DNA of 64,000 nucleotides, taken from IMG/VR virus record IMGVR_UViG_3300020810_001156, positions 62,001 to 126,000 of that record, one strand, 5' to 3'. The notes beneath the pieces are model-generated. The model had not been told where the DNA came from. It ran no database searches and worked only from the letters and a program-made list of their open reading frames with translations. Shown here one piece after another: positions 27,541 through 64,000 of the stretch. The stretch's first letter is position 1, and every line of letters begins with the position of its first letter. A program made the position numbers and the translations under genes.

Positions 27541-27545
27541 ATTAT

Positions 27546-27554
27546 ATATTTATA
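27546..27554 (+). promoter_or_regulatory. Putative phage late promoter (ATATTTATA)
   Basis: Recurrent motif 36 nt before ATG 27591. Confidence 0.55.
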
Positions 27555-27590
27555 TATGAATTCAAAACAAATTAATTAATTTAAAGTCAT

Positions 27591-27959
27591 ATGGCAAAAG
27601 AAAGCAAACAACAAATTGAATTACTTACTATTGATTTAGGTGAGAGTACAATCGGTTCTATCAAAGAAAAAAATGCAAAGATTAACGATATCGTTAATGC
27701 ATTTGGTCAAATCTATCTTCGTAAAAAAGAATTAAACGAAGAGTTAGAAAAGTTAGAAACAACTTTACAACAAGCTGAAGCTGATTTTAAAGAATCAAAC
27801 GATGCTTTAAGAGAAGAATTAAGTGCATTGGATAAAGAGTATCCAAGAGGACAGATAAACCTTAAAGAAGGTACACTAACATACAACCCAGCTATCAAAG
27901 AGCAGATGAATCAGCAAAACGCAAATTTAACATCTGATAATATAGAAGTGGTAAAGTAA
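27591..27959 (+). CDS. Small coiled-coil hypothetical protein, paralog of 22739..23011
   Basis: Shared C-terminal YPxGQIxLxxGTxTY motif. Confidence 0.7.
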   Translation: MAKESKQQIELLTIDLGESTIGSIKEKNAKINDIVNAFGQIYLRKKELNEELEKLETTLQQAEADFKESNDALREELSALDKEYPRGQINLKEGTLTYNPAIKEQMNQQNANLTSDNIEVVK

Positions 27960-27967
27960 GAAACCTT

Positions 27968-27976
27968 ATATTTATA
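27968..27976 (+). promoter_or_regulatory. Putative phage late promoter (ATATTTATA)
   Basis: Recurrent motif 28 nt before ATG 28005. Confidence 0.6.
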
Positions 27977-28004
27977 TAGTACAAAGGAAATAGTACTATA
28001 TCAG

Positions 28005-46509: not shown

Positions 46510-46510
46510 G

Positions 46511-46966
46511 ATGCCAAGATTTGCATTAGATAGAGATATAAGATTCTTTGAATCAATTTCAAGAGAGTTGGTAGATGCTGTAATTGAAACTACGGTAGTT
46601 CTATTCAAACTTGCTATTGATGATATTTCAACAAACCTTTATGGTGAATCTCTAAATAAATCATATTATCAAGGTACAGAATGTACTGCAGTGATTGAAA
46701 GAGATGATTCTTCTATTTCTTACGAAGGATTTGGACCGGATAGTGGACAAAATGTAGAGTTCAGATTCAATCGTATTAAGTTAAAAGATAAAGGGTTCTA
46801 TCCAGAAATCGGTGATATTATCATGCACAATGATGCATATTTTGAAATCGATAATGTAAGAGAGGACCAACTAATTGGTGGACAAAGTGGAGAGAAATTC
46901 TCAATCATTTGTTCAACATTTATGACAAGAAGAAGTACTATTCAAACTGAAATGAGAGTTATCTAA
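46511..46966 (+). CDS. gp14: Head closure/neck protein (T4 gp14-like)
   Basis: NLYGES..KSY, YPEIGDII, YFEIDNV; synteny gp13-gp14-gp15. Confidence 0.62.
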   Translation: MPRFALDRDIRFFESISRELVDAVIETTVVLFKLAIDDISTNLYGESLNKSYYQGTECTAVIERDDSSISYEGFGPDSGQNVEFRFNRIKLKDKGFYPEIGDIIMHNDAYFEIDNVREDQLIGGQSGEKFSIICSTFMTRRSTIQTEMRVI

Positions 46967-48054
46967 TGAATAAGAAAGAAACAAATAGAGCATTACAAAG
47001 AGGTATCAAACCAGAATACACTAAAGGTGTAAAACTTTTAGATGTAGATACTACTATTGCAGAGTATATGGTGGATACTATCATTCCTGATGTAGAAGAA
47101 CACAATAGTAAAGTTAAAGTTCCTCTACTTTACGGAAATGCTGAAAGATGGAATAATGCTCGAGCAAAAGGATATTTGAGAGACCAAAGGGGTAAGATTC
47201 AAATTCCTTTAGTAATGTTCAAAAGAAATTCCATCGAAAGAGATACAAACTTAGCACAATTTAAGGATATAAACACCTTACCAGCTTACAAAAAATATTC
47301 TTCTCAAAATAGATACGAAAGATTTTCATTACAAACTGGAGCAAAAAAAGCATTTGAACAATATGAAGTTTCGGTTCCTGATTATGTAACGGTAACTTAT
47401 GAGGTAATGATTTGGACATCATTTACCGAACATATGAATAAGATTGTAGAAGCATTTCAATATGCTACTGATAGATATTGGGGTAAAGAAGATGGATTCA
47501 AATTTAGAACTCGTATTGATTCATTTGATAACCAACAAGAAGTGGGAGAAGGTTCAGAAAGAATCATTAGAACTTCTTTCACTATGGTAGTAAACGCTTA
47601 TTTACTTCCTGAAACATATGATGAAAAACCAACTGTTAAAAAAACATTTACCCCTAAGAAAGTTGTATGGGGTGTTGAAACAGATTTAAGTGGATTAACA
47701 TTTACTAATCCCAACATATATAATGAATATCAGAATGTTATAGATTTTGTAGCAATACGAAGTTCACAAAGAGCTGAATTAGTTAATGGTGGTGATGCCG
47801 TTACTGGTGATGGTGCTATTGTAAAAATAACAAATGTAAGAAAGCCGGTTTTACCAACTGAATTAATTGGTTCGTTTGATACATTAAATTGGTTTAGAGT
47901 TTACATAAATACTGAATTCAAACCGGCATCTACTTACACTTATTCTTTTAATGGAAGTACAAATGAAATATCATTTACTTTTAATGAAACTTTAGGATTT
48001 CAATTAGATGCAAATGATGAAGTGGATATTGTAGGTAAATTTGAACAACTATGA
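46966..48054 (+). CDS. gp15: Tail terminator/sheath stabiliser (T4 gp15-like) with an extra C-terminal beta-sandwich
   Basis: KVPLLYGNAERW, VPDYVTVTYEVMIWT, RTSFTMVVNAYL; synteny. Confidence 0.62.
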   Translation: MNKKETNRALQRGIKPEYTKGVKLLDVDTTIAEYMVDTIIPDVEEHNSKVKVPLLYGNAERWNNARAKGYLRDQRGKIQIPLVMFKRNSIERDTNLAQFKDINTLPAYKKYSSQNRYERFSLQTGAKKAFEQYEVSVPDYVTVTYEVMIWTSFTEHMNKIVEAFQYATDRYWGKEDGFKFRTRIDSFDNQQEVGEGSERIIRTSFTMVVNAYLLPETYDEKPTVKKTFTPKKVVWGVETDLSGLTFTNPNIYNEYQNVIDFVAIRSSQRAELVNGGDAVTGDGAIVKITNVRKPVLPTELIGSFDTLNWFRVYINTEFKPASTYTYSFNGSTNEISFTFNETLGFQLDANDEVDIVGKFEQL

Positions 48055-48810: not shown

Positions 48811-51800
48811 ATGGCTAGATTAATACCACAAAAGCAGATTGAAGAAGTAAATATTTTTAGGGATAGTATATCCGTAGGTAATTCTGTCTTTATATCTGGT
48901 TCTCTTTTAGTTTCTCAATCAATCGATATTGGTAATGATTTAACCACACCACAAAGAATAACTGGTTCGGTTCAAATTACTGGTTCAATTAATATTGATG
49001 GTGATTTAACATTTGCTAGAGCAGAAAGTAGATTAGATGCAACCGCATCTTTTTCTGATGTATCGGTTGATACTCAAAGATTTGGTGGTATTCCAGTAGC
49101 AGAATTCGGAGGTAGTGATGCAACAGTTTATGTATCTGCTACTAGAGGTGATGATTCCAATGATGGACGTTCACCACAATTCCCAGTTAGAACAATTAAG
49201 AGAGCAGCTCAGATAGTAACTCCTGGTGATGATGGTAGATATGGTTTACCAACTGGTTCCAACTTTACTGGTTTTAGAATTGATGTACAAGCTGGTACTT
49301 ACTTAGAAGATAATCCAGTTGAACTTCCAAGAAACACAACTGTTTGGGGAGCTGGTTTAAGGGTTACCAAAGTTGTTGCTAAGAATGAAAACGAAGATTT
49401 ATTTTGGGTAAATAGTGGTAACTATTTAGCAGAGATGACTTTTGCTGGATTAAGAGTATTTCCATCAGTTGATGATTCCCAGAAAGGTTTTGCAATATCA
49501 TTTGCTCCAAACGCATTTATTACAACATCTCCTTATGTTCAGAACTGTTCAATGATTTCCAATCAGGAAAACTCATTCTTAGAAGCATATGAGGATATTC
49601 CTGCTGGTGGTGGTGGATTGAATGTAGATGGTAATAGAATTCATCCTGATTCACCTCTTGCTTCAATGGTACTTGATGCATATACACAGGTTGCACCAAA
49701 CGGTGTTGGTTGTCAAGTTGTAGGTAGAGGATTTATTCAGTTAGTATCGTTCTTCACAAACTTCTCTGCATATTCAGTAAAAGTAATTGATGGTGGGCAA
49801 GCAGTATTACTTAACTCCAACACTTCATTTGGTGATTTTGGTATGTATGCGTCTGGTTCTCGTTTCATCACTGGTAGTGGTGGTAATACTGAAGCATTTT
49901 TAAATGTACAAGATAATTACTCAATTATTGTTGATACAATTGAAAGGGGATTGGGTGAAATTCCTGATTTAGTTACAAATACTGAAGATGGTATTAAAGT
50001 AACTAATGAATTACAAAAATTCAATACAGGTGCACAAGCAAGTGATAAAGATGCAAAAACAGTTGTATCTGATTATAGATTAATATCTAATTTGATTGAA
50101 AGAGGAGTTGAAAATAAAATTCCTATTTTAGCCGTATCATCGGATAGAGGATATAATTCGGGTTCAGTATGGAATGTTAGTGGTGATAATCAAATAACTT
50201 CATCAACTACGGCATCTGAAGATGATTTAAGTACAATCAATACTAATTATGATATTGTTTTAGATATAATTGAAAGAGGTAATGCAGCTACATCATCATA
50301 CATTTATGTAGATAATGTTAGTTCTTCAATTAAAATAAGTGATGTCGAGCAATACAAATCATCACCGGTATCTGATATTACGGAAGATACAATTGGTGAA
50401 CGATTTGATACTATTATTTCCATCATAGAAAATGGTTTAGATTTTATTCCAGAAATAAAATTAAATACATCTCAATCGTTTAAGGTAACCGATACAACTC
50501 AATATATTACTGATTTATCTTCATCATTAAATGTTAGAGAAGCAGTAAGTTCTTCGTTATCTATTGTATATAATATTTTGGATAATGGAACAGGTTCAGC
50601 ACCAGCAATTATTCAGAGTAGTTCAAACGAAAATCCAACGATTGATTATCAAAATGCTTACGCATTACTAATTGAAAACATTCCATTTATTCAAGAAGAA
50701 ACGATTGCTTATTTGAGTTCGTCTTGGAGTGAGTTTGAATACAACCAAACTACTTGTAAGAGAGATGTTGGTTATATCGTAAGTGGTGCTGCGCATGATT
50801 TATTATATGGTGGTAATGAAGAATCGGTGAGAAATGGTAACTTCTATTACCTCTATCCATCGGATGCAACAACAACTCAAAAAGACCCAACCCTAACGGC
50901 AATCAAATATGTTGCTGGTATGGTTGATAATATATTATCAGATACAACTTTTGTAGAAACAACTGCTGAGGCTGATAATGCATACAGCTTATTGTTTGAA
51001 AATAAACGATTTATACAATCCGAATCTATTGCATATGTAAGTTCTTCTTGGAGTACATTTGAGTACAATGAAGCTAAGTGTGTAAGAGATTTGGGATACA
51101 TCATAGATGCGGTAGCAACTGATATCAAATATGGTGGTAATGAGAGAAGTGTAATCGCTGGTAATTTCTATTACAAATACCCATCCCAGGCAACTGTAAA
51201 TAATAGTACTGTTGGTGGACAATTAAATCAAACAATTGATGGTATTAAGTACGCTAAGAGGATAGCTCAGAAGTTAGCTAAAAACGAAACATTCGTAACT
51301 CAATCGGCATCTACACTTACTATCGCTGATACACTATTACAAAATCGTTCTCTAATTCAAGACGAAACGATTACATATATTAATACAACATATCCAAACT
51401 TCTCATATAACGAAGCAAAATGTAGAAGAGATACTGGATATATTTTGGATGGTGTGATTACCGATTTAAGATATGGTGGGGTGGAACGCTCTCAATTATC
51501 GGGTCTATACTACTACCTATATCCATCAATCGCAAACACAACTCAATTAGAAGAAACCTTAGAGGGTATCAGATATTCTAAAGGATTTGCATTGGAAGTT
51601 GCTCAATCTAATTTGATTGAAATACCAACCGCTAAACGAAATATTGAAAAACGAATTAAGGTTGGTGATGTGCAATACATAACATCATCGATTAGTGGTA
51701 CTGAGTTTGAATCTAAGTATATTAGTGGTTCAATTGGAATCGTTGAAGATATCATTAGATTTGGTAATGATTCGGTATTAGCTTCAATTGCTGAAAATAC

Positions 51801-54800
51801 TGGAAGTTTTAATTGGAGTATATCTTCACCAATAAATGTAAGTAGTGTACTTCCAATAACATCATCGGTAACTGAATCCGTTAACATACAAAATGTAAGT
51901 GATGGGTTTGATATTGTTACCTCAATCATAGCTGGTGGTGAATCTGTTATACCTCAACCAACATCTTCTTGGGAAGGTACAATTAAAGTAACTGATACTC
52001 CACAATACATTAGTAGTAGTTTATCATCAACATCTACCGAAGCAACTTTGGTTTCTCAATCAATTGCTATTGTGGCAAATATAGTACAAAATGGTGTTGA
52101 TTCATTACCACCATTAACAGCTAGTATAGATGGGTTAATCAAAGTAACAAATCAACTTCAGAATACGGATTATAGTGGTTCTTTAACTGAGGCAACTAAA
52201 GTTAGTTCATCATTTGCTACTATAACAAATATTGTAGAAAATGGTGTAGGTGTGATTCCTACAATTGTATCAAATACAAACGAAAATATTAAGTTCTTTA
52301 ACGATAGTGTTCAATACATATCTTCTTCGTTTAGTGGAAGTTTAGAGGATGTATCATTCATTTCATCTTCTATTTCTTATGTAACATCAATTATCGCAAA
52401 TGGAACTGGCTCATATACTGCTAGTGAATATCCATCACAACCACTTTCATCATCAAATGCAATTGCGGCATACCAAATCCTAAGAAACAATATTGATTTC
52501 ATCAAAGATGAAACAATTGCATATTTGAGTTCTTCTTGGAGTACCGCATCTTATGATGAAAGTAAATGTAGAAGAGATGTTGGTTTAATTATCTCAGGCG
52601 CCGCAGAAGATTTAATTTGGGGAACTGTATCATCTTCAATAGTAAATGGTAAGTTCTACTATGAATATCCTTCACAAGCACAAGGTGCACAATTAAATCA
52701 AACATTAGATGGTGTATTTTTCGCAAGTGAAGTAGCACAAAAACTTATTCAGAATATTGAGTTCGTAACCGCATCTGTTGAAAGAAGGGGAGCTTGGAAC
52801 GCAATTACTGAAAATGAAGATTTCATTAAAGAAGAAATGATTCAATATCTATCTTCTTCTTGGAGTACTTTTGATTATAACGAAACAACTTGTAGAAGAG
52901 ATGCTGGATATATTTTAGATGCAGTTAAAACTGATATCTACTATGGTGGTAATGAGAGAAGTGCTATTGCTGGTAACTTCTATTACCTATATCCATCGGC
53001 AGCAATTTTAAGTGGTAGTGCATCTCCAACACCTACAACACAATTAGTACCAACATTAGATGGATTGAGATATGCTGGTAGAATTACTGAAGCAGTTGTA
53101 ACTGGTAGTTCATTCTCATTCCCATCTCAAGCAAAATTAGATGCTAAGAATGTTCTTCTTAATAACAAACAATTTGTACAAGATGAAACAATAGCATACC
53201 TATCTTCTTCTTGGAGTGAGTTCTCATACAACCAAACAACTTGTAAGAGAGATATAGGATTTATTATAGATGCTGCTGTAACTGATGTAGTTTATGGTGG
53301 TAATGAGAGAAGTAGAATCGCATCTAATTTCTACTATCGTTATCCATCTGCAGCAATTGTAGGTGGTGTTCCTTCAACAACTCAACAAAAAGACCCAACG
53401 GTTGATGGTATCAAATATGTGGGTGGTATTTCTGAGAAGATTGTATTGGGTGAAACATTCACATCAGCGGATAGCACTAAGATAACAATTAAAAACTCAA
53501 TCATTGATAACAAATCAAATGTACAACAACAAACAATTGATTACATCAATGATACTTACCCAAATCTAAACTATAACAACGATAAGTGTTTTAGAGATGT
53601 TGGGTTCATCATAGATGCAGTTGTAACTGATTTAGTATATGGTGGAAATGGTAGAAGTGTTCAAGCTGGAGCATTCTATTATAGATTCCCATCACAAGCT
53701 ACATTCTCACAATTAAGTGAAACGGTAGATGGTATCAACTTCGCTAGAGATTTAATTAAATTAGATTTAAGAGGAGCTAATTCAGTAGAGAATTCATTCG
53801 ATACTGTAATTAAAATTATTGAAAGTGGTAGTTCTATTGTAACTGAAGAAACAATCGGAACAGGTTCAGCTCCAGTGCCTGAATCTCAAATAGGAGACCC
53901 AATTTCTACTATTGGAATTCCTAAAGATTCATATGGTGATGGTTTAGTAAAAACTGTAATTACTACTTCCATACCAACTTTTGAATTGACTGAAAACACA
54001 GATTCGGGTATTAAGTTTGGTAGTGATACACAAATTACAGGTTCTATAACTTCATCAGTTAGTGAATCATTAAAAGTATCATCTTCATTCTCAGATATTA
54101 TTGATATCATTAAATATGGTACTTCTGGTAGTTTAAGTTTGAGTGGTTCTTTTGATACCTCAACTTACTACGAAGTTGTTACTCCAGAAACTGGTGATTA
54201 TTATATTATCAATAGAGCTCAATTGGATGAGTTTGATGGTGTAAGAGCAGGTGGATATTTTAATACCGAAGAAAATACAGGTTCATTCTCAGATGGTATT
54301 AAAGACCCAACTTTAACATTGAAAAGGGGTGAAATGTACACCTTCTCAGTAAATGCTCTAAAATACGATTTAAATCCATTCTACATTAAAACTGCTAGAA
54401 AGCCAAATAAAGAAGCTCTTTATAATGAAGGTGTAACTAATAATGGTGTAAACTTTGGAACTTTAACATTTATCGTTCCACTAGAAGCACCGGATAGATT
54501 ATATTATGTAAATGGTAATAATGTATCTGCTAGTGGTATTATCAATGTAGTTGATAATTTACCAATTTCGGATACTCAAAGATATATTGAAGTTCCATCT
54601 AAAGGATTTGTTGAAATAACTACTAACAATGTTGATAATATTAAGATATCAAATATATCTCAATATTCATCTTCATTCAGTGCTTCGGTTGATGAATCAC
54701 ATGAAATTAGTTCATCATTTGCAACTACAATAGAAATATTGAAAAATGGTGTAGATGATTTACCAACTATTGTTGAAAATACATCTGGTTCAATAAAAGT

Positions 54801-57800
54801 AACAAATACATCACAAATTACATCTTCAATAACACCATCTGAATATGAACTAAATAATGTAAGTTCATCATATGCAATTGTTATTGATGTTTTACAAAAT
54901 GGAACAAGTTCTTTACCAACCGAAATATCAAATACATCAGCTAGTATAAAAGTAACTGATGTACCTCAATATATTTCATCTTCGGTAAGTGGTACATTAG
55001 AAAATGTTAATTTTATATCTTCATCGGTATCAATAGTTTATAACATAGTACAATTAGGTTCATCTGGTTCGTACACCGCTAGTTTATATGATACTGGTAG
55101 TGGAGTATCTACCGATGAATCAACGATAGCTGCATATCAAATTATTAGAAATAATATTCCATTTATTCAATCAGAAAGTTTAGCATACCTATCTTCGTCT
55201 TGGAGTACTGCTTCTTATGATGAAGTAAAATGTGGTAGAGATATTGGCTTAATAATATCTGGTGCGGCTGAAGATTTAATTTGGGGTACTGTATCATCAT
55301 CAGTTGTAAATGGTAGGTTCTATTTAGAATATCCATCTCAAGCTGAAACATCTCAATTAAATCAAACATTGGATGGTATTGAATATGCTAGTAAACTTAC
55401 TCAAAAATTAATTCAAAATATTCAATTTGTAACTGCTTCAAATGAAGCATCTGCATCACATCAATTATTGTTAGATAATAAGGTATTAATTCAAAATGAA
55501 ACAATTGAATACATATCATCATCTTGGAGTGATTTTGTTTACTCAGATATATTATGTAGAAGAGATATTGGACATATTGTAGATGCTGCAGCAACTGATA
55601 TTCTTTATGGTGGTAATGAACGTTCTGTACAAGCGGCATCTTTCTATTACAGTAATCCATCCGCAGCAACTGGTTCACAATTGAATCAAACTGTTGATGC
55701 GATTAATTACGCTAGAAGAATATCTAATAAAATACTTCAAAATCAAGTTTTAGAATTACCTGAATTACAAACTTTAGGAGTAGCAGAATTAATCTCTGAA
55801 AATAAAAGTTTAATTCAAGAAGAAACTATTCAATTCCTTTCTTCTTCTTGGAGTACATTTGAATACAATGAAGCTAAATGTAGAAGAGATACTGGATACA
55901 TTATAGATGCGGTTGTAACCGACTTCGTATATGGTGGTAATGAAAGAGCAGTAAATGCTGGAGAATTCTATTACCTATACCCATCAGATGCAACTGGTTC
56001 ACAATTAACACAAACTGTTGATGGAATCACTTACGCACAACGATTGACAAATAAATTAATTAATAATATAACTTTAGTAACTTCATCATTAGAAAGAAGA
56101 GCAACTAAAGATTTATTAATGGATAACAAAGGATTGATTCAAAATGAAGTTATCCACTTTATAAGTTCTTCTTGGAGTACATTTGAATATAATGAATCTA
56201 AGTGTAAGAGAGATGTTGGGTATATCCTAGATGCTATCGCTACTGATATTGTTTATGGTGGTAATGAAAGAAGTGTAGTGGCTGGTGAGTTCTATTATAG
56301 ATATCCATCTGAGGCAACAACTACTCAATTAGACCAAACAATTACAGGTGTAAAACATGCAGCTGGATTATCAGAAAAAATTATTCAAAACACACTATTA
56401 GTAAATCCCGATAGTAACACATTAGAAGCTTACAATAGAATTAGAAATAATAAATTATTTATACAATCCGAAGTTATTGAGTTTGTTGATAACTTATATC
56501 CATACTTTACTTACAATAGAGTTAAGTGTAAGAGAGATGTTGGATTTATTTTAGATGCGGTAGCAACTGATTTATTATGGGGAGGCAATGAAAGAAGTAT
56601 TATTGCTGGTGATTACTATTACAGATATCCATCACAGGCAACCACTTTCCAATTAAGAGAAACTATTGAGGGTATTAGATACGCTAAAGCTCTTACTAAG
56701 GATGTGATTCTAAACAAAGAGTTTGAAAGACCAAGAATTATCCTTAATAGTGAAAATCATATTAAGGTTGATGGTGTTCCACAATATAGTGGTTCAATGG
56801 CTATTAGTGGTAGTAATTTAACTGAAATTAGTTCTTCATTTGAAATTATTAACAATGTAATTTTAGGTGGATTAAATAACTTACCAACAGAACATAAGGG
56901 TATTGAATCATTAACTAAAGTAACAAACGCAATTCAAACAACTAACTCAGCTACTCAATCCGTATCTGATATTAGTTCATCATTCGCAATTGTGATTGAT
57001 GTGATTCAAAATGGAGTTGGAAATATTCCAACGATTGTATCAAACACAAACAACAATATCAAAGTTGGAAATATTGAACAATACATTTCTTCATCTGCTA
57101 GTGGTAGTTTAGAAAATGTAAACTTTATTTCATCTTCTATTGATATTGTAACCGATATTATAACAAATGGTGTTGGTGGATATGTACCTACAAATTACAC
57201 AACTTCATCTACCGATGAATCAACAATTGCGGCTTACCAAATCCTAAGAAATAACATTGATTTCATTCAGGAAGAAACAATAGCTTATTTATCATCTTCT
57301 TGGAGTGGATTTGTATATGATGAATCAAAATGTAGAAGAGATGTTGGATTGATTGTAAGTGGGGCAGCTGAAGATTTAATTTGGAATACTGATTCATCTT
57401 CAATTGTAAATGGTAAGTTCTATTTAGAATACCCATCTCAGGCAACAAGCTCACAATTAGACCAAACATTAGATGGTATTTTCTACGCTAGTAATTTAGC
57501 TCAGAAATTGATTCAGAATGTAACATTCTCATCGGCAGATTCTACTATTGTTGATTCTTATAACTCAATTGTAAATGAAAAAGCAACTATCCAATCTAAG
57601 GTAATTGCATACTTATCATCCTCATTCCCAACTCACCAATACAATGAAAGTAAGTGTAGTAGAGATGTGGGTTACATCATTGATGGTGTAGCAACTGACT
57701 TACTATATGGTGGTAATGAAAGAAGCGTTAAATCAGGAAATTACTATTACAAATATCCATCACAAGCAACTGGATATCAATTAGAAGAAACTGTTGCTGG

Positions 57801-60800
57801 TATTGAGTACGCACAAAGATTAACTGAGGTTGCATCTCAAAACAAAGGAACACAAATTGGAATTGTATCGGCAAGTATTGATATGATTAACGATATTATT
57901 AGATTAGGTTCTGATGATATTCCATTTACTATCGCTAAGCATTTCCAAACTTCTGAGTTAGATACTCCACAACAATTAACAACGGGTTCTTATACTCAAA
58001 TAGCTGGACCTACATTAGATTCAGAATACAACAATGGTTCAATTATATCTTTAACTGGTGATGGTAGTGATTTCTTCAAAAAAGAAGTTACAGTCAATGG
58101 TGTAAGAATTGTTGTAGCCGGTGATGTTGGTGGACAAACTGCTGTACCTGATGCATTTACTGAGAAAGTTGCTCGTATGTTTGAATTATTTACTGACCCA
58201 AGTGGTTCGGGAATAAATGAAACATTCCAAAGAAATTTAATTAAAACATTAAGTGGTGATAGTGGAACTTACCACGCTGGATTACCAACTATACAAAGAG
58301 TAGCAAGAGGAGCTGGAAGTGATTATACTCCAAACTTCCTTGATGATGCTGGTATTTTATATTGGAACTTAACAAACTTGTTTGATACTCATGTACAAAA
58401 CGATATGGTTTGGTATCTAAACTCAACAGGTGATATATCTGGTTCTGGTGATATAGATGCACAAGAAGTAATTGAACACATATTCCACACATTACATATG
58501 CATGGTTTACCTGCAGATGATATAAAACTATATTCTTATTTGGCATCTGATTGGCAGACTGGTGATTTATATCTTGCAATGGAAGAGGCATATGATGCTG
58601 GATTGTGGGATTCATCGGGATATGGTGGTAATAGTTGGAAAACTGATTCTGATGCATTTGAGGTAGCTGCTAAAGAATATCTATATTTGTTAAACTTCTC
58701 AATGTTTGAATATACCGATTTATGGGAAAATGGAAGTCTTTCTCCTGAGTGGGATGATTCAATGAGAACACAAGCTGGAATTTTAGCAAATAACCCATTA
58801 GGTTATGCATTCCATAACACATATATTTCACCTACAATTAGTAAACCATCATTGGCAACTATTAGAAGTATATTCCAAGATGGTGATTTGGGTGACCCAA
58901 CAATAGCAGGTGAATCTGGATATGTTGTAACTCCAACTGGAACTTATACAACTGATACTGAATTAGCAATCGTAAGTAGTTCATTCTCATTAATTAATGA
59001 TATTATTGAAAATACAACATCATCTATTGCTGATTTTGTTGATAATACTTACAACAAACGTAAGTTTACAAACACAACTCAATATTCATCTTCTGTATCT
59101 GCATCAACGGCTGAACTTTCAATTGTTGATAATAGATTTGGAATTGTGGTGGACATTGTTGAAAATGGATTATCTCAAAAACCAACTATCGTAAGAAATA
59201 ATACCGATGTTGATAACCTAATTAAGGTAACGGATACTCCACAATATATTTCAGCATCATCAGCTGATAAACTACAATCTAAGATTGTATCTTCATCAAT
59301 CGCTATTGTAACTGATATTATTGAGAATGGAAGTGGTTCGGCACCTACGATTATTGAGTACACAACTCCATCTGATTCTCCAAAAGCTAAATTGGCTTAT
59401 CAGTTAATTAAGAATAACCTACCATTTATTGTATCTGAATCAATCGCTTACATTTCATCTTCTTGGAGTGATTTCTCATACAACGAAGCAAGTTGTAGTA
59501 GAGATGTTGCATTGATTGTGAGTGGTGCAGCGGAAGATTTAATTTGGAACTCAAATTCCGCATCGGTGGTAAATGGTAAGTTCTACTTAGAATATCCATC
59601 TGCCGCAACTGGTTCTCAATTACAACAAACATTAGATGGTATCAATTATGCTAGTACTCTAACTCAACACATTGTAAGAAATAGAACATTCGTAACCGCA
59701 TCATCATCAGTTTCGGCATCTTACAACTTATTGGTTGAAAACAAAGAATTTATCCAAAACGAAACTATCGCTTACTTATCTTCTTCTTGGAGTGATTTCT
59801 ATTACTCCGAATCTAAGTGTAAGAGAGATGTTGGGTATATTATAGATGCAGTAGCAACTGATTTGAAATATGGTGGTAATGAAAGAAGTGTTATTGCTGG
59901 AGATTACTATTATAGATATCCATCAGCAGCGATTGTGGGTGGTGTACCAAATGTAGACCAACAAAAAGACCCAACTGTAACTGGTATCAATTACGCTAAA
60001 TCATTGGCAAATGAGTTACTAAGTGGTTCTCAGTTTGTAACTGCTTCAAACGAAGTTGAATTCGTTTACGATTCAATTAGAGAAAATAGAGAATTTATCC
60101 AAGCGGAAACTGTTGCATTTGTAAACGCTAAATATCCAAACTTAGAATACAACGAAGCTAGTTGTAGTAGAGATGCTGGATTCATCGTAGATGCGGTAGC
60201 AACTGATTTAAGATGGGGTGGTAACCAACGCTCAATCGTAGCTGGACAGTACTACTATAAATTCCCATCACAAGCAACAACCGCACAATTGGGTGAAACT
60301 ACTGATGCAGTAATTTACGCATCTAAGTTGGTAACTGAATTGATTGATAAGAATACTTTACCAATTCCATCAGCTAGTTTGAATACTAACAATAATATTA
60401 AAGTAACATCAACACCTCAATACATTTCAGCATCTTCTGCTGGTGAAGTTGAATTAACTAAGATTAGTTCTTCATTCGCATCAGTTAGTGGTATTGTTGA
60501 AGATGGTGTGAGTGTTATCCCAACATTAGTTGAAAACTTAAATGAGAACATTAAAGTAACAAATGTTACTCAATACATTTCTTCATCAGCTAGTGGTTCA
60601 TTAGAAAATATTTCATTTATTTCAGAATCGGTTGAGATTGTAACTGATATTATTTCTAATGGAACTGGTTCACTTCCATTGTTTGGAACTTATACAACTC
60701 CATCAACTGATGAAAGTACAATCGCAGCTTACCAAATCCTAAGAAGTAATATTTCATTCATTCAATCGGAATCAATAGCTTACTTATCATCTTCTTGGAG

Positions 60801-63297
60801 TACGGCATCTTATGATGAAGCTAAATGTGCTAGAGATATTAAGTTGATTATTAGTGGAGCAGCTGAAGATTTAATTTGGAACGCTAATTCCGCATCTATT
60901 GTAAATGGTAAATTCTACTATGAATACCCATCCCAAGCGCAAGGAGCTCAATTAAATCAAACTTTAGATGGTATCAATTACGCAAGTAGATTGGCACAAA
61001 AACTTATTCAAAATATTGAATTTGTAACTGCATCTTCTGAAAGAGTTGTAACATCTGAATTGTTGAGATTGAACACACCATTCATTCAGACTGAAACAAT
61101 CGCTTACTTATCTTCATCTTGGTCAACTTTTGATTATGATGAAGTAACTTGTAAGAGAGATGTTGGATACATTATTGATGCTGTAAGAACTGATATTGTA
61201 TATGGTGGTAACGAAAGAACTAACAAAGCAGGAAACTTCTACTACTTATATCCATCACAAGCAACTGGTTCTCAATTAGACCAAACATTGGATGGAATCA
61301 GATACGCTGGTAGATTGGCTGAGAAAGTTGCTAGTAATATTCAATTAGTATCACCATCATCAGCTTCTCAACAATCTTATGATTTATTAAGAGATAACAA
61401 AGGATTCATTCAAAGTGAATCAATCGCTTACTTATCATCTTCTTGGAGTGAGTTTGATTACAACCAAGAAACTTGTAAGAGAGATATTGGATACATCTTA
61501 GATGCTATTTCAACTGATATTCTTTATGGTGGAACTGAGAGAAGTGTAATAGCTGGAAATTACTATTACAAATATCCATCATCAGCAACTAACGCTCAAT
61601 TAGACCCAACGGTAACTGGAATTGAGTACGCGGGTGATATGATGGAAAAAGTAATTGTAAACCAAATATTCCAATCTCCATCAGCTGAAAGAATTGCTGG
61701 TAACGAATCGTTACTAAACAATAGAACATTCATTCAATCAGAATCATTGGCTTACTTAACTGCTAGTTGGAGTACATTTGAGTACAACAAAGATAAGTGT
61801 GCTAGAGATGTTGGATATATTGTGGATGCAGTTGCAACTGATTTCTTATATGGTGGAAATGAAAGAAGTAGAACCGCTGGTGAATACTACTACTTATATC
61901 CATCGGAAGCAACTTCAGTTCAAGCAAATCAAACAACTGATGGTGTGAAATACGCTGGTAGAATCTCTGAAGCATTGGTTCAAAATATCCAATTCGTAAC
62001 AGCATCTACCGAAGTATCCGCATCGTTTGACTTGTTGAGAAAGAACAAACCATTTATCGCTGAAGAAACAATTCAGTATGTATCTTCTTCTTGGAGTGGT
62101 GTTTACTATGATGAAGCTAAATGTAGAAGAGATACTGGATTCATAGTAGATGCAGCAGCAACCGATTTATTGTATGGTGGTAACGAAAGAAGTGTTATCG
62201 CTGGTAATTACTACTTCAAATACCCATCATCGGCAACTGAAAGAGGTGTACCTTCGGTGGTATCTCAATTAGACCCAACAACTACTGGTATCAAATATGC
62301 TAGTGGATTGGCTCAAAATGTGATTCAAAATATTGAATGGAACGAACCATCAGCATCGGTATTAGTTGCGGCTGATTTATTGGTGAATAACAAAACATTT
62401 ATTCAAAAAGAAACTATCGCATTTTTATCTTCATCTTGGAGTGAGTTCGCTTACAATGATGTAAGTTGTAGTAGAGATTTGGGTTACATCATAGATGCGG
62501 TTAGAACTGATTTGGTATATGGTGGTAACGAAAGAAGTATCCAAGCGGCTACATTCTATTACTATATTCCTTCAGTAGCAATTACTGAACAAAAACCCCA
62601 AACAATCGATGGTATTGATTTCGCAAAAGGAATGGCTGAAAAAGTTATTAAGCAAGACCAATTAACATTCGCTAGTTTGAATAGAAGAAATGGTTACAAT
62701 GAATTAAGAGCAGCGAAGAAATATTTACAATCATCGGCAATTTCATATACTGAAGCAGCATTCCCAGGTTTTGAATATAACGAAGAAAAATGTTATAGAG
62801 ATACTGGATTTATTTTAGATGCTATTTCAACTGATTTACTATATGGTGGTAATGAGAGAAGTATTGAAGCTGCAAAATCTTACTACAATGGTGTTTATGG
62901 TGATGCTAGTGTAGTGATAAACGAACAAAAGAAAGAAACGGCAGAAACAAATAGATATTTAAGAACTTTATTCCAAAAAGTTGCTAGAAATGCACCATTG
63001 GAATTATTTGGTTCACTAATTATTACTACTGGACATGATTTCTCATATGCTGGTTCTGGTGTAACTTATAAAGCATTACCTCCTAACCAAGGTGGTAATG
63101 GAGTTCCAGACCCAGATAAAGAAATTGTTGAATTGGGTGGAGGTAGAGTATTCTTCACTGCGGGTAACGAACTTGGTGACTTTAAGATTGGTACGGGACT
63201 TGTAATTAATCAGGCAACTGGTACATTACAGGGTAGAACATTCTCTCGTTCATTATTCTCATTAGTTACACCATTCTCTCTCGCTCTGGAAGGGTAA
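48811..63297 (+). CDS. Giant virion structural protein (4828 aa): beta-helix-like ends, 24 CxRD helical repeats, about 20 shorter linker repeats, and two inserted domains
   Basis: Uninterrupted ORF. N-terminal YVSATRGDDSNDG..P..TIKRA / QAGTYLE / GAGLRVT is pectate-lyase-like; the repeats are read directly from the translation. Confidence 0.85.
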   Translation: MARLIPQKQIEEVNIFRDSISVGNSVFISGSLLVSQSIDIGNDLTTPQRITGSVQITGSINIDGDLTFARAESRLDATASFSDVSVDTQRFGGIPVAEFGGSDATVYVSATRGDDSNDGRSPQFPVRTIKRAAQIVTPGDDGRYGLPTGSNFTGFRIDVQAGTYLEDNPVELPRNTTVWGAGLRVTKVVAKNENEDLFWVNSGNYLAEMTFAGLRVFPSVDDSQKGFAISFAPNAFITTSPYVQNCSMISNQENSFLEAYEDIPAGGGGLNVDGNRIHPDSPLASMVLDAYTQVAPNGVGCQVVGRGFIQLVSFFTNFSAYSVKVIDGGQAVLLNSNTSFGDFGMYASGSRFITGSGGNTEAFLNVQDNYSIIVDTIERGLGEIPDLVTNTEDGIKVTNELQKFNTGAQASDKDAKTVVSDYRLISNLIERGVENKIPILAVSSDRGYNSGSVWNVSGDNQITSSTTASEDDLSTINTNYDIVLDIIERGNAATSSYIYVDNVSSSIKISDVEQYKSSPVSDITEDTIGERFDTIISIIENGLDFIPEIKLNTSQSFKVTDTTQYITDLSSSLNVREAVSSSLSIVYNILDNGTGSAPAIIQSSSNENPTIDYQNAYALLIENIPFIQEETIAYLSSSWSEFEYNQTTCKRDVGYIVSGAAHDLLYGGNEESVRNGNFYYLYPSDATTTQKDPTLTAIKYVAGMVDNILSDTTFVETTAEADNAYSLLFENKRFIQSESIAYVSSSWSTFEYNEAKCVRDLGYIIDAVATDIKYGGNERSVIAGNFYYKYPSQATVNNSTVGGQLNQTIDGIKYAKRIAQKLAKNETFVTQSASTLTIADTLLQNRSLIQDETITYINTTYPNFSYNEAKCRRDTGYILDGVITDLRYGGVERSQLSGLYYYLYPSIANTTQLEETLEGIRYSKGFALEVAQSNLIEIPTAKRNIEKRIKVGDVQYITSSISGTEFESKYISGSIGIVEDIIRFGNDSVLASIAENTGSFNWSISSPINVSSVLPITSSVTESVNIQNVSDGFDIVTSIIAGGESVIPQPTSSWEGTIKVTDTPQYISSSLSSTSTEATLVSQSIAIVANIVQNGVDSLPPLTASIDGLIKVTNQLQNTDYSGSLTEATKVSSSFATITNIVENGVGVIPTIVSNTNENIKFFNDSVQYISSSFSGSLEDVSFISSSISYVTSIIANGTGSYTASEYPSQPLSSSNAIAAYQILRNNIDFIKDETIAYLSSSWSTASYDESKCRRDVGLIISGAAEDLIWGTVSSSIVNGKFYYEYPSQAQGAQLNQTLDGVFFASEVAQKLIQNIEFVTASVERRGAWNAITENEDFIKEEMIQYLSSSWSTFDYNETTCRRDAGYILDAVKTDIYYGGNERSAIAGNFYYLYPSAAILSGSASPTPTTQLVPTLDGLRYAGRITEAVVTGSSFSFPSQAKLDAKNVLLNNKQFVQDETIAYLSSSWSEFSYNQTTCKRDIGFIIDAAVTDVVYGGNERSRIASNFYYRYPSAAIVGGVPSTTQQKDPTVDGIKYVGGISEKIVLGETFTSADSTKITIKNSIIDNKSNVQQQTIDYINDTYPNLNYNNDKCFRDVGFIIDAVVTDLVYGGNGRSVQAGAFYYRFPSQATFSQLSETVDGINFARDLIKLDLRGANSVENSFDTVIKIIESGSSIVTEETIGTGSAPVPESQIGDPISTIGIPKDSYGDGLVKTVITTSIPTFELTENTDSGIKFGSDTQITGSITSSVSESLKVSSSFSDIIDIIKYGTSGSLSLSGSFDTSTYYEVVTPETGDYYIINRAQLDEFDGVRAGGYFNTEENTGSFSDGIKDPTLTLKRGEMYTFSVNALKYDLNPFYIKTARKPNKEALYNEGVTNNGVNFGTLTFIVPLEAPDRLYYVNGNNVSASGIINVVDNLPISDTQRYIEVPSKGFVEITTNNVDNIKISNISQYSSSFSASVDESHEISSSFATTIEILKNGVDDLPTIVENTSGSIKVTNTSQITSSITPSEYELNNVSSSYAIVIDVLQNGTSSLPTEISNTSASIKVTDVPQYISSSVSGTLENVNFISSSVSIVYNIVQLGSSGSYTASLYDTGSGVSTDESTIAAYQIIRNNIPFIQSESLAYLSSSWSTASYDEVKCGRDIGLIISGAAEDLIWGTVSSSVVNGRFYLEYPSQAETSQLNQTLDGIEYASKLTQKLIQNIQFVTASNEASASHQLLLDNKVLIQNETIEYISSSWSDFVYSDILCRRDIGHIVDAAATDILYGGNERSVQAASFYYSNPSAATGSQLNQTVDAINYARRISNKILQNQVLELPELQTLGVAELISENKSLIQEETIQFLSSSWSTFEYNEAKCRRDTGYIIDAVVTDFVYGGNERAVNAGEFYYLYPSDATGSQLTQTVDGITYAQRLTNKLINNITLVTSSLERRATKDLLMDNKGLIQNEVIHFISSSWSTFEYNESKCKRDVGYILDAIATDIVYGGNERSVVAGEFYYRYPSEATTTQLDQTITGVKHAAGLSEKIIQNTLLVNPDSNTLEAYNRIRNNKLFIQSEVIEFVDNLYPYFTYNRVKCKRDVGFILDAVATDLLWGGNERSIIAGDYYYRYPSQATTFQLRETIEGIRYAKALTKDVILNKEFERPRIILNSENHIKVDGVPQYSGSMAISGSNLTEISSSFEIINNVILGGLNNLPTEHKGIESLTKVTNAIQTTNSATQSVSDISSSFAIVIDVIQNGVGNIPTIVSNTNNNIKVGNIEQYISSSASGSLENVNFISSSIDIVTDIITNGVGGYVPTNYTTSSTDESTIAAYQILRNNIDFIQEETIAYLSSSWSGFVYDESKCRRDVGLIVSGAAEDLIWNTDSSSIVNGKFYLEYPSQATSSQLDQTLDGIFYASNLAQKLIQNVTFSSADSTIVDSYNSIVNEKATIQSKVIAYLSSSFPTHQYNESKCSRDVGYIIDGVATDLLYGGNERSVKSGNYYYKYPSQATGYQLEETVAGIEYAQRLTEVASQNKGTQIGIVSASIDMINDIIRLGSDDIPFTIAKHFQTSELDTPQQLTTGSYTQIAGPTLDSEYNNGSIISLTGDGSDFFKKEVTVNGVRIVVAGDVGGQTAVPDAFTEKVARMFELFTDPSGSGINETFQRNLIKTLSGDSGTYHAGLPTIQRVARGAGSDYTPNFLDDAGILYWNLTNLFDTHVQNDMVWYLNSTGDISGSGDIDAQEVIEHIFHTLHMHGLPADDIKLYSYLASDWQTGDLYLAMEEAYDAGLWDSSGYGGNSWKTDSDAFEVAAKEYLYLLNFSMFEYTDLWENGSLSPEWDDSMRTQAGILANNPLGYAFHNTYISPTISKPSLATIRSIFQDGDLGDPTIAGESGYVVTPTGTYTTDTELAIVSSSFSLINDIIENTTSSIADFVDNTYNKRKFTNTTQYSSSVSASTAELSIVDNRFGIVVDIVENGLSQKPTIVRNNTDVDNLIKVTDTPQYISASSADKLQSKIVSSSIAIVTDIIENGSGSAPTIIEYTTPSDSPKAKLAYQLIKNNLPFIVSESIAYISSSWSDFSYNEASCSRDVALIVSGAAEDLIWNSNSASVVNGKFYLEYPSAATGSQLQQTLDGINYASTLTQHIVRNRTFVTASSSVSASYNLLVENKEFIQNETIAYLSSSWSDFYYSESKCKRDVGYIIDAVATDLKYGGNERSVIAGDYYYRYPSAAIVGGVPNVDQQKDPTVTGINYAKSLANELLSGSQFVTASNEVEFVYDSIRENREFIQAETVAFVNAKYPNLEYNEASCSRDAGFIVDAVATDLRWGGNQRSIVAGQYYYKFPSQATTAQLGETTDAVIYASKLVTELIDKNTLPIPSASLNTNNNIKVTSTPQYISASSAGEVELTKISSSFASVSGIVEDGVSVIPTLVENLNENIKVTNVTQYISSSASGSLENISFISESVEIVTDIISNGTGSLPLFGTYTTPSTDESTIAAYQILRSNISFIQSESIAYLSSSWSTASYDEAKCARDIKLIISGAAEDLIWNANSASIVNGKFYYEYPSQAQGAQLNQTLDGINYASRLAQKLIQNIEFVTASSERVVTSELLRLNTPFIQTETIAYLSSSWSTFDYDEVTCKRDVGYIIDAVRTDIVYGGNERTNKAGNFYYLYPSQATGSQLDQTLDGIRYAGRLAEKVASNIQLVSPSSASQQSYDLLRDNKGFIQSESIAYLSSSWSEFDYNQETCKRDIGYILDAISTDILYGGTERSVIAGNYYYKYPSSATNAQLDPTVTGIEYAGDMMEKVIVNQIFQSPSAERIAGNESLLNNRTFIQSESLAYLTASWSTFEYNKDKCARDVGYIVDAVATDFLYGGNERSRTAGEYYYLYPSEATSVQANQTTDGVKYAGRISEALVQNIQFVTASTEVSASFDLLRKNKPFIAEETIQYVSSSWSGVYYDEAKCRRDTGFIVDAAATDLLYGGNERSVIAGNYYFKYPSSATERGVPSVVSQLDPTTTGIKYASGLAQNVIQNIEWNEPSASVLVAADLLVNNKTFIQKETIAFLSSSWSEFAYNDVSCSRDLGYIIDAVRTDLVYGGNERSIQAATFYYYIPSVAITEQKPQTIDGIDFAKGMAEKVIKQDQLTFASLNRRNGYNELRAAKKYLQSSAISYTEAAFPGFEYNEEKCYRDTGFILDAISTDLLYGGNERSIEAAKSYYNGVYGDASVVINEQKKETAETNRYLRTLFQKVARNAPLELFGSLIITTGHDFSYAGSGVTYKALPPNQGGNGVPDPDKEIVELGGGRVFFTAGNELGDFKIGTGLVINQATGTLQGRTFSRSLFSLVTPFSLALEG
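50650..62990 (+). repeat. Coding tandem repeats: 24 copies of a ~108-aa unit (N..FI..E..AYL...Y...KCxRD.G.I.DA...DL.YGGN.RS..AG..YY..PS)
   Basis: First Cys codon at 50755, last at 62791; many neighbouring units are 324 nt apart (e.g. around 55880, 56204, 56527). Confidence 0.92.
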
Positions 63298-63339: not shown

Positions 63340-64000
63340 ATGGCAGATGAATTAATTCCATTAAACGCATTTAAATCAGTAGTTGCAACTTTGACTGGTG
63401 AGGAAGACCAGGTGTATAAAGCACCTACTGGTGTTTCTACTATTATATTATCGGCTCAAATTACAAACAATGGTACACAAACCCAAGAAGTTGTAATTAA
63501 GTTAGCACCAAACAGAATTTTACCAGTTCCACAAGTTGCTGGAATTGCAAATTCAGGAAGTTTCTTCTCATCATCAGCATTAATAGTTGAAAATAAAAAT
63601 TTCCTTAAAAAAGAAGTAGCTGCTTACACTAGATTCAATAATAATCTTCAAGAAATTCCATTTGGATTTTCATCATCAAGATATGAAGAATATGTTGAAA
63701 CCGCTGTAAACGCTGTAACATTTGATATAATTAATAGTGGTAGTACAATTAGAACCAATAAAGCGGCACTATCTTTTTATGATAAAGATGGTGTATTATT
63801 GATTCCATCAAATCAAATTACAGCATCAATAAATGCAATATCGTACACAAATACACTTGCTCAGAAAATTATTCTAAATGAATCAGTAACGGGTTCTGAT
63901 GATGTAGATAGATTATATCAATCAAGCGTAACACAATCAATTAATACTAATTTAATAGCTGAAAGTGGTTCATCAAATATTATAAGAGAACTATTTACTG
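63340..64000 (+). CDS. 5' part of a further virion protein running off the right edge; contains a Cys-less copy of the 108-aa repeat
   Basis: ATG 63340, open to the end of the window (MADELIPLNAFKSVVATL...); missing from the ORF track because it has no stop. Confidence 0.8.
   Translation, partial: MADELIPLNAFKSVVATLTGEEDQVYKAPTGVSTIILSAQITNNGTQTQEVVIKLAPNRILPVPQVAGIANSGSFFSSSALIVENKNFLKKEVAAYTRFNNNLQEIPFGFSSSRYEEYVETAVNAVTFDIINSGSTIRTNKAALSFYDKDGVLLIPSNQITASINAISYTNTLAQKIILNESVTGSDDVDRLYQSSVTQSINTNLIAESGSSNIIRELFT

What the first reader, a model, noticed from the sequence alone, without database searches (positions are those of the whole stretch)
50650..62990. 24 tandem phycobiliprotein-like (globin-fold) repeats, each retaining the bilin-attachment C-x-R-D, in a giant virion protein
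Seen: 24 copies of a ~108-aa helical unit, e.g. LLNNRTFIQSESLAYL...YNKDKCARDVGYIVDAVATDFLYGGNERS...QTTDGVKYAGRISEAL. The Cys, Arg and Asp are invariant; apart from two N-terminal Cys I see no other Cys in 4828 aa. Established (from memory): phycocyanin alpha reads KAKCARDIGYYLR.VTY.L.AGG around the chromophore Cys84, with Arg86/Asp87 contacting the bilin. Allophycocyanin has L..N...I helices before this site and AVAEGV helices after it, matching the repeat's flanks. Inference: the virion may carry an array of tetrapyrrole-binding domains, i.e. a pigmented or light/redox-sensing or UV-shielding fibre, or a phycobilisome mimic on a phage that appears to infect Bacteroidota. Alternatively the Cys form inter-repeat disulfides on a globin-like scaffold. 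No bilin synthesis or lyase gene is in this window.
Basis: partly seen in the sequence, partly recalled or inferred. Interest (0 to 1): 0.88.

Follow-up and report, generated by a model that had tools for sequence, protein, structure and literature searches.

The report
Phycobiliprotein-like repeats in phage fibre
A 4828-residue fibre protein of an uncultured T4-like jumbo phage carries 24 copies of a small helical domain that looks like a distant relative of the light-harvesting phycobiliproteins of cyanobacteria. Each copy still has the Cys-x-Arg-Asp motif that binds the pigment in those proteins; the link appears unreported, and whether any pigment binds is untested.

Summary
ORF 48811-63297 (+) encodes 4828 aa with 26 Cys, 24 of them in C-x-R-D motifs, one per ~108-aa helical repeat, arranged in six clusters.

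The phycobiliprotein (PBP) link goes beyond the motif:
- A profile of 801 diverse repeats aligns to nine PBPs at HHalign probability 93% (P 3.5e-7; controls P >= 0.014). Cys/Arg/Asp fall on PBP Cys84/Arg86/Asp87.
- An AlphaFold model of one unit plus 60 residues (pLDDT 86) has PBPs as all 50 best PDB matches. TM is only 0.45-0.53 and the best E-value is 0.011.

Pfam has no model for the repeat. About 1277 cluster representatives carry it, mostly giant proteins. Among 50,697 cultured-phage records it occurs only in cyanophages (350 records). This phage, however, carries a TonB receptor whose closest relatives are all in Bacteroidota.

Repeats that lost the Cys also tend to lose Arg, Asp and Tyr97, but not the fold-keeping residues. 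Cys is mostly replaced by Phe or Tyr. That pattern fits a joint chemical site.

No bilin synthesis or lyase gene appears in about 147 of the 252.6 kb examined. Pigment binding remains a hypothesis. I found no paper describing the link.

The parts
48811..63297 (+). Giant fibre gene, 4828 aa.
   Evidence: ORF. PHROG 4527 'short tail fiber' at E 3.5e-226 and PHROG 5342 'tail fiber' at E 5e-173. No Pfam family.
48811..50556 (+). N-terminal region, aa 1-582. It holds the only two Cys outside the motif (246, 301). Short ~45-aa spacer-type repeats start around aa 350.
   Evidence: No significant PDB sequence match.
50557..51546 (+). PBP-like repeat cluster 1 (units 1-3; Cys 649, 757, 871).
51547..52368 (+). 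Spacer 1, built from ~45-aa units (IKVT..QYISSS..ISSSF..I.ENG).
52369..53712 (+). PBP-like repeat cluster 2 (units 4-7).
53713..55032 (+). Spacer 2, with an unidentified globular insert (aa ~1780-1930).
55033..56652 (+). PBP-like repeat cluster 3 (units 8-12).
56653..57132 (+). Spacer 3.
57133..57780 (+). PBP-like repeat cluster 4 (units 13-14).
57781..59295 (+). Spacer 4, with an unidentified ~340-aa domain (aa ~3040-3380, contains HIFHTLHMH).
59296..60288 (+). PBP-like repeat cluster 5 (units 15-17).
60289..60627 (+). Spacer 5.
60628..62916 (+). PBP-like repeat cluster 6 (units 18-24). Both AlphaFold models come from this cluster.
62917..63294 (+). C-terminal 126 aa. It matches the C-terminus of PHROG 3442.
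63340..64000 (+). Start of a 287-aa ORF that runs off the window. At 63550-63783 it holds one degenerate unit without Cys: C, R and D are replaced by Y, E and Y, while D81 is kept.
45361..48054 (+). Neck genes just upstream: a gp13-like adaptor (45361-46509) and a gp15-like tail sheath stabiliser (46966-48054).
   Evidence: PHROG 211 and 227. Pfam T4-gp15_tss at E 1.4e-5, 24.9 bits against a cut-off of 25.

Best explanation
Shown:
- The gene encodes a giant virion fibre of a T4-like jumbo phage that most likely infects Bacteroidota.
- Rod segments of the fibre are tandem arrays of a ~108-aa five-helix domain that looks like a remote relative of the phycobiliprotein (PBP) fold. Helices h2-h5 correspond by sequence to PBP helices A, B, E and F. 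I infer that the first helix of the next unit plays the part of G.
- The unit has no X-Y hairpin and lacks the PBP alpha-beta interface residues.
- Cys-x-Arg-Asp sits exactly where PBPs attach and hold their bilin.

Inferred: Cys67, Arg69 and Asp70, together with Tyr62 and Tyr97, still form one chemical site per repeat. The Cys thiol most likely makes a covalent bond to a small molecule. A bilin-type linear tetrapyrrole is the leading candidate, for example biliverdin or a phycobilin, depending on the host. If so, the fibre would carry about 24 ligands per chain.

Also inferred: the domain probably entered phages from a cyanobacterial host and later spread between aquatic phages with fibre modules.
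For: Homology:
- HHalign of 801 diverse repeats against nine PBPs gives probability 93%, P 3.5e-7, over 59 columns (repeat 28-86 against PBP 35-104).
- Reversed and 20 column-shuffled controls score 7.5-18.4 against 41.9.
- The only five PDB sequence hits of the repeat profile are PBPs, aligned at Cys84.
- A PBP HMM hits 17 of 18 times in register.

Fold:
- pLDDT is 80.8 and 86.4 for the two models.
- All 50 best Foldseek PDB hits are PBPs, with probability mostly 0.9-1.0.

Site:
- Among 801 repeats, C is kept in 774, R in 780, D in 789. Among loci, C is kept in 486 of 488.
- Loss is coupled. In 27 Cys-less repeats from 17 proteins, R is kept in 56% against 98.8% (p 3e-14), D in 59% against 99.9% (p 8e-17), and Y97 in 81% against 99.9%.
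- D81, N41, E48, G85 and N87 are unchanged in those repeats.
- Cys is replaced by F or Y in 15 of 27 cases.
- The neighbouring giant fibres have 2-4 Cys in the 3300-3800 aa read.

Host: all 80 genome relatives of the phage TonB receptor are Bacteroidota in the older, broad sense (two are Balneolaceae).
Against: - Pfam PF00502 does not match at E <= 1-10.
- TM-scores are only 0.45-0.53 and the best Foldseek E-value is 0.011.
- The sequence alignment stops at the GG after helix E.
- No heme oxygenase, bilin reductase or lyase was found in about 147 of the 252.6 kb.
- The likely host makes no phycobilins.
- P-HM1 repeats read C-x-D-D.
- P-SSM2 has ho1 and pebS but no repeat.
- D81 is the most conserved residue and has no PBP counterpart.
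- I know of no report of coloured virions.
Confidence: 0.45

Rival explanations
1. PBP-derived but purely structural. The domain was taken over as a rigid helical spacer. Cys, Arg and Asp persist because they hold the helices together (buried Cys, Arg-Glu and Asp-Tyr bonds). Nothing is bound.
For: - Fibre repeats are usually structural.
- AlphaFold places neighbouring units confidently (pTM 0.71-0.75).
- No bilin genes were found.
- The likely host is not a cyanobacterium.
- D81, which is absent from PBPs, is the most conserved residue.
- P-HM1 tolerates R to D.
Against: - A packing Cys should drift to Ala, Ser or Gly. It is 97-99.6% conserved and is replaced mainly by Phe or Tyr.
- The triad is lost as a unit while the fold residues stay.
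- The PBP residues that were kept are the chromophore ones. The alpha-beta interface ones (R93, Y97) were not.
Confidence: 0.3
2. The Cys serves cross-linking or metal binding. It would form disulfides or metal sites between chains of an oligomeric fibre, or an autocatalytic intramolecular cross-link helped by Arg/Asp.
For: - There is one invariant thiol per unit in an otherwise Cys-poor extracellular protein.
- It is co-conserved with Tyr62 and Tyr97.
- From general knowledge, phage fibres often bind metals on their axis.
Against: - Clusters of 3, 5, 3 and 7 units, and odd totals in relatives, rule out systematic pairing within one chain.
- Trimers cannot pair thiols.
- There is no His or second Cys for a metal site.
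- The replacement by Phe/Tyr does not fit.
Confidence: 0.15
3. The resemblance is convergent or chance. An unrelated helical repeat happens to carry K-C-x-R-D-x-G-Y...GG.
For: - No search reaches conventional significance at database scale: PDB HMM E 0.32, Foldseek E 0.011.
- Helical proteins give spurious matches.
- Foldseek also uses sequence, so it is not fully independent of the sequence evidence.
Against: - The alignment spans 59 columns, including the L..N and Y positions before the motif, with a fixed 18-residue Cys-to-GG spacing.
- Controls fall far below the real score.
- PBPs are the only family returned by two methods.
- Among cultured phages the family occurs only in cyanophages.
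Confidence: 0.1

Closest known systems
Phycobiliproteins (phycocyanin, phycoerythrin, allophycocyanin; Pfam PF00502)
   Same: - All-helical, globin-related fold.
- Helix A/B/E region alignable.
- Cys84/Arg86/Asp87 equivalents are present, with the same 18-residue spacing to the GG.
- A Tyr sits in the loop before helix E.
   Different: - 108-aa unit with five helices.
- No X-Y hairpin, and no R93/Y97 interface residues.
- Tandem copies in one chain instead of alpha-beta discs.
- Encoded by phages as part of a virion fibre.
- No Pfam match.
- Pigment not shown.
Giant 'tail fibre-like / virion structural' proteins of T4-like cyanophages (S-PM2d088, T4-GC 830; P-HM1 PHM1_097; PHROGs 4527 and 5342)
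   Same: - The same repeat family, placed in the virion module near the baseplate and neck genes.
- S-PM2d088 picked up non-synonymous changes during co-evolution with its host (PMC9910659).
   Different: - Only 23-44% identity.
- Fewer detected repeats (5-7 in S-PM2).
- P-HM1 has C-x-D-D.
- Their hosts are cyanobacteria, whereas this phage points to Bacteroidota.
- These proteins are still annotated as hypothetical, and I found no paper noting a PBP link.
PBP-like domain of the core-membrane linker ApcE, and engineered allophycocyanin smURFP (from my own knowledge)
   Same: These are PBP-fold domains that attach a bilin to Cys without a lyase. smURFP uses biliverdin. This is a precedent for lyase-free loading in a host without phycobilins.
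   Different: They are full-size PBP domains in photosynthetic or engineered contexts. No sequence comparison was made here.
Helical repeat rods such as spectrin repeats
   Same: Consecutive helical bundles that form an elongated rod.
   Different: - Spectrin and other helical-repeat matches had Foldseek probability <= 0.18 in the three-repeat search and are absent from the top 50 of the single-unit search.
- Such repeats conserve mainly hydrophobic positions, not a polar Cys/Arg/Asp/Tyr set.

Membership tests
Phycobiliprotein family (PF00502) | Match to the curated family model. | tested here: not met
   There was no PF00502 hit for the whole protein (E <= 1), for the 24 single units (E <= 10), or for S-PM2d088 and seven other members.
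Phycobiliprotein family (PF00502) | Detectable sequence homology by profile-profile comparison. | tested here: met
   HHalign probability 93%, P 3.5e-7, over 59 columns. Controls had P >= 0.014. The weaker 24-unit profile gave probability 60%. The reciprocal PBP HMM hits in register.
Phycobiliprotein family (PF00502) | Globin-like PBP fold with helices X, Y, A, B, E, F', F, G, H. | tested here: inconclusive
   All 50 best PDB matches are PBPs, with probability mostly 0.9-1.0. TM is 0.45-0.53 and E >= 0.011. A unit has only five helices and borrows the next unit's first helix.
Phycobiliprotein family (PF00502) | Cys84, Arg86 and Asp87 at the bilin site. | tested here: met
   These residues are aligned column for column. 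They are conserved in 97-99.9% of 801 repeats.
Phycobiliprotein family (PF00502) | Alpha-beta interface residues (Asp13, Arg93, Tyr97; their role is from my own knowledge). | tested here: not met
   R93 and Y97 are invariant in the nine PBPs. The repeat has D76 and T80 at those columns, and it has no X-Y region.
Phycobiliprotein family (PF00502) | Covalently bound bilin. | not testable with these tools
   This needs spectroscopy or mass spectrometry.
Phycobiliprotein family (PF00502) | Bilin synthesis or lyase genes in the same genome or host. | tested here: inconclusive
   None appear among the Pfam-annotated genes of about 147 of 252.6 kb. About 42% of the genome was not seen.
Cyanomyovirus giant fibre/structural proteins (PHROG 4527, 5342) | Match to the family profiles. 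| tested here: met
   E 3.5e-226 and 5.1e-173, with 23-24 matched stretches. BFVD top hits are cyanophage tail or structural proteins.
Cyanomyovirus giant fibre/structural proteins (PHROG 4527, 5342) | Position in the virion module near the neck genes. | tested here: met
   The window gene follows gp13-like and gp15-like genes. S-PM2d088 lies about 3.3 kb upstream of gp13-gp15, separated by four small genes.
Cyanomyovirus giant fibre/structural proteins (PHROG 4527, 5342) | Presence in purified virions. | not testable with these tools
   Relatives are annotated 'structural protein'. S-PM2d088 itself is annotated as hypothetical.

The most novel reading that the evidence does not exclude
The repeats are working biliproteins on the virion. 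Each Cys would carry a bilin, so that fibres of T4-like cyanophages and of related aquatic phages are pigmented and respond to light.

This could supply the missing sensor for light-dependent adsorption. S-PM2, P-HM1 and P-HM2 have the repeats. P-SSM2 still adsorbs in the dark, though less than in the light, and has none (PMC6628666). It could also provide a substrate for the phage CpeT-type lyase, whose role is unresolved (PMC3037559).

In this Bacteroidota phage the ligand would have to be biliverdin or another host metabolite.
Probability: 0.2. Interest if true: 0.95.

Novelty: new variant of a known kind. Interest (0 to 1): 0.8.

Why it matters
The PBP fold is regarded as a hallmark of the antennae of cyanobacteria, red algae and cryptophytes. 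Here a relative of it is a building block of phage fibres:
- About 1277 cluster representatives carry it.
- 350 cultured cyanophage records carry it.
- It occurs in a phage whose likely host is not a cyanobacterium.

This would be a clear case of a host photosynthesis protein turned into a virion part and then passed between phages.

It also makes two old questions testable. One is why cyanomyoviruses carry bilin and lyase genes, which PMC3037559 calls a mystery or unresolved. [quoted passage not shown]

Even if nothing binds, the family deserves a domain model. Annotation currently calls these proteins 'short tail fiber', 'YapH' or 'hypothetical'.

Tried and rejected
- DNA tandem repeats: none found.
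- The search for related loci with the repeat alignment failed because no stretch was conserved enough. The single-protein query worked.
- The genome-contig scan for the repeat found no relative, so there is no prophage or host clue from that route.
- Extending the HHalign match past the GG with a 1.4-unit profile gave no extension.
- PDB sequence searches of the N-terminus, two spacers and the C-terminus found nothing significant.
- Walking the 252.6-kb contig:
  - Strain variation broke one step.
  - Giant genes of 4590 and 3866 aa blocked the downstream walk.
  - A collagen-like query pulled in unrelated phages.
  - About 42% of the genome stayed unseen.
- The context of a divergent member (P0009) was uninformative. 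P0010 was too long for the tool.
- The paper on the phage CpeT lyase (PMC5336146) is not held.
- The inter-repeat disulfide idea was rejected on Cys parity.
- A strict link between phage bilin genes and the repeat was rejected: P-SSM2 has ho1 and pebS but no repeat.

Full report
**1. Observation**

The window holds one 4828-aa ORF at 48811-63297 on the + strand. It has 26 Cys. Two are N-terminal (246, 301) and 24 lie in C-x-R-D motifs.

Cutting 108 aa around each motif gives 24 alignable units, 35-56% identical to the reference unit (repeat 21). Y62, C67, R69, D70, I74, D81 and Y97 are invariant. Each unit matches a repeat HMM at i-Evalue 7e-26 to 2e-39.

The units form six clusters of 3, 4, 5, 2, 3 and 7. 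Spacers separate the clusters; they carry their own ~45-aa repeat and two unidentified inserts. There is no repeat at DNA level, so the array is old.

**2. Context**

The window is part of IMGVR_UViG_3300020810_001156, a 252.6-kb contig. It encodes:
- T4-type replication and morphogenesis genes: primase, SbcCD-like nuclease, terminase, Portal_T4, the gp21-type protease and the major capsid protein.
- A gp13-like adaptor and a gp15-like sheath stabiliser directly upstream of the giant gene.

Downstream lie four elements:
- a 287-aa ORF with one Cys-less unit;
- a 4590-aa fibre gene;
- a few small ORFs;
- a 3866-aa fibre gene.

Neither of those fibres has the repeat, and the 3300-3800 aa read hold only 2-4 Cys.

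The capsid protein is 52% identical both to a Flavobacterium phage and to a Microcystis phage. About 40 kb upstream of the window the phage carries a 906-aa TonB-dependent receptor with the CarboxypepD_reg-Plug-barrel layout. All 80 of its closest relatives in genomes are Bacteroidota in the older, broad sense (two are Balneolaceae), with up to 72-76% identity to Polaribacter and Flavobacteriales. With 32% G+C, a Bacteroidota host is the best reading.

**3. Is it phycobiliprotein-like?**

Four lines of evidence bear on this.

a. Sequence against solved structures. A profile of the 24 units, searched against all PDB sequences, returns only five chains. All are PBPs, aligned at Cys84, but E is only 0.32-1.6.

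b. Profile against profile. I fetched nine PBPs by reference from cyanobacterial plasmids.
- HHalign of the 24-unit profile gives probability 60%.
- A profile of 801 distinct repeats from 150 cluster representatives gives probability 93%, P 3.5e-7, score 41.9, over 59 columns: repeat 28-86 against PBP 35-104, that is helices A, B and E up to the GG.
- The reversed alignment and 20 column-shuffled PBP alignments score 7.5-18.4.
- A PBP HMM run back on the giant protein gives 18 weak stretches. Seventeen of them are in register at the Cys sites.

c. Fold.
- AlphaFold models of three units (pLDDT 80.8, pTM 0.71) and of one unit plus 60 residues (pLDDT 86.4, pTM 0.75) are all-helical, with five helices per unit and the Cys near the start of the fourth.
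- With the three-unit model, the only PDB matches with Foldseek probability above 0.6 are PBPs.
- With the shorter model, all 50 best matches are PBPs: probability mostly 0.9-1.0, TM 0.45-0.53, best E 0.011.

d. Limits.
- Pfam PF00502 does not match.
- The sequence alignment does not continue after the GG.
- TM-scores are borderline.
- The PBP residues R93 and Y97 are replaced, and there is no X-Y hairpin. As far as I recall, those residues serve the alpha-beta interface.

My reading is remote homology to PBPs in a truncated unit, with about 0.8 confidence.

**4. The conserved site**

C, R and D are kept in 97-99.9% of 801 repeats, and C in 486 of 488 repeats from 54 related loci. D81 and Y97 are equally constant.

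In 27 repeats that lack the Cys, from 17 proteins:

| Residue | Kept without Cys | Kept with Cys | p |
|---|---|---|---|
| R69 | 56% | 98.8% | 3e-14 |
| D70 | 59% | 99.9% | 8e-17 |
| Y97 | 81% | 99.9% | 2e-7 |
| Y62 | 67% | 90% | 1e-3 |

D81, N41, E48, G85 and N87 do not change in these repeats. The repeats are only slightly more diverged overall.

The Cys is replaced by Phe or Tyr in 15 of 27 cases. The Cys-less unit in the downstream ORF follows the same pattern.

So Cys, Arg and Asp, with two Tyr, behave as one unit that can be lost while the fold stays. A bulky residue then takes the place of the Cys. That fits a ligand site better than a packing role.

Repeats are related to one another, so the p-values overstate independence.

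Systematic disulfides within a chain are excluded by the odd cluster sizes.

**5. Distribution**

A full scan of 1.84 billion cluster representatives finds 1277 proteins at E <= 0.001. Most of the best 150 are 1000-6400 aa, with up to 36 repeats.

In 50,697 cultured-phage records, the window's repeats hit 62 records, S-PM2's hit 350 and P-HM1's hit 328. Every one is a cyanophage. BFVD agrees.

S-PM2d088 (3338 aa) has at least five C-x-R-D units. It mutated during co-evolution with Synechococcus (PMC9910659). P-HM1 PHM1_097 has units reading C-x-D-D. P-SSM2 has none in 249.3 of its 252.4 kb.

**6. Bilin supply**

The Pfam listings for about 147 kb of this phage's genome show no heme oxygenase, bilin reductase, CpeT/CpcT, CpeS or HEAT-type lyase. 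About 42% of the genome was not reached.

P-SSM2 carries ho1 and a pebS-type reductase without the repeat. The phage bilin genes therefore do not exist only for these proteins.

**7. Literature**

Searches for a PBP link to phage fibres found nothing.
- PMC3037559 calls the role of phage pebS and pcyA a mystery and that of cpeT unresolved.
- PMC10452541 notes that, with one podovirus exception for pebS, these genes occur only in myocyanophages.
- PMC6628666 reports that P-HM1 and P-HM2 do not adsorb in the dark, whereas P-SSM2 does, though less than in the light. [quoted passage not shown]

The three repeat-bearing phages are the light-dependent ones. This is three or four phages, two of them close relatives, so it is only a lead.

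**8. Verdict**

The PBP-like nature is supported, and the site is under joint selection. Pigment binding and any light-related role are unproven, and for this phage they are weakened by the host and by the lack of bilin genes.

I rate it a new variant of a known kind, with interest 0.8.

Noticed in passing
L063:5316-6991 (upstream of the window, same phage): The phage encodes a PAS_4/PAS_9/PAS_3 + HATPase_c histidine kinase (410 aa) next to a response regulator (148 aa). That is a complete two-component pair on a phage.
   Followed up: no
L070:5009-7729 (minus strand): A 906-aa TonB-dependent receptor with a CarboxypepD_reg + Plug + barrel layout is carried by the phage. All 80 closest genome relatives are Bacteroidota in the older, broad sense, with up to 72-76% identity.
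   Followed up: yes
window 63340-64000 and beyond; L001:13592-22288; L152:10345-20333: Three giant fibre genes lie within about 42 kb (4828, 4590 and 3866 aa), with a few small ORFs between them. The second and third are built from beta-type SGS repeats and collagen-like GTS/GSG runs and are almost free of Cys.
   Followed up: partly
window 13880-22288: A 2802-aa ORF has precomputed hits to Gp53-like_C and a weak Intein_splicing hit. It has no PHROG match.
   Followed up: no
window 57930-58950 (aa ~3040-3380 of the giant protein): Spacer 4 contains an unidentified globular insert with a His-rich stretch (HIFHTLHMH). It has no PDB or Pfam match.
   Followed up: partly
L064 and L071 (upstream of the window): Auxiliary genes of the kind common in marine phages: PhoH, HSP20, UvdE, peptide deformylase, dCMP deaminase and NT5C. 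There is also a sugar-modification cluster (DegT aminotransferase, acyl-CoA dehydrogenase, hexapeptide transferase, sulfotransferase).
   Followed up: no
window 23084-31151: A block of glycosyltransferase/methyltransferase, Glyco_transf_9, cytidylyltransferase and PfkB kinase genes lies upstream of the terminase. It resembles the heptose-nucleotide genes of P-SSM2.
   Followed up: no
L234:4861-15891 (P-HM1 PHM1_097): In this Prochlorococcus phage the repeat motif reads C-x-D-D instead of C-x-R-D, and D81 is not always kept. GenBank calls the protein 'YapH'.
   Followed up: partly
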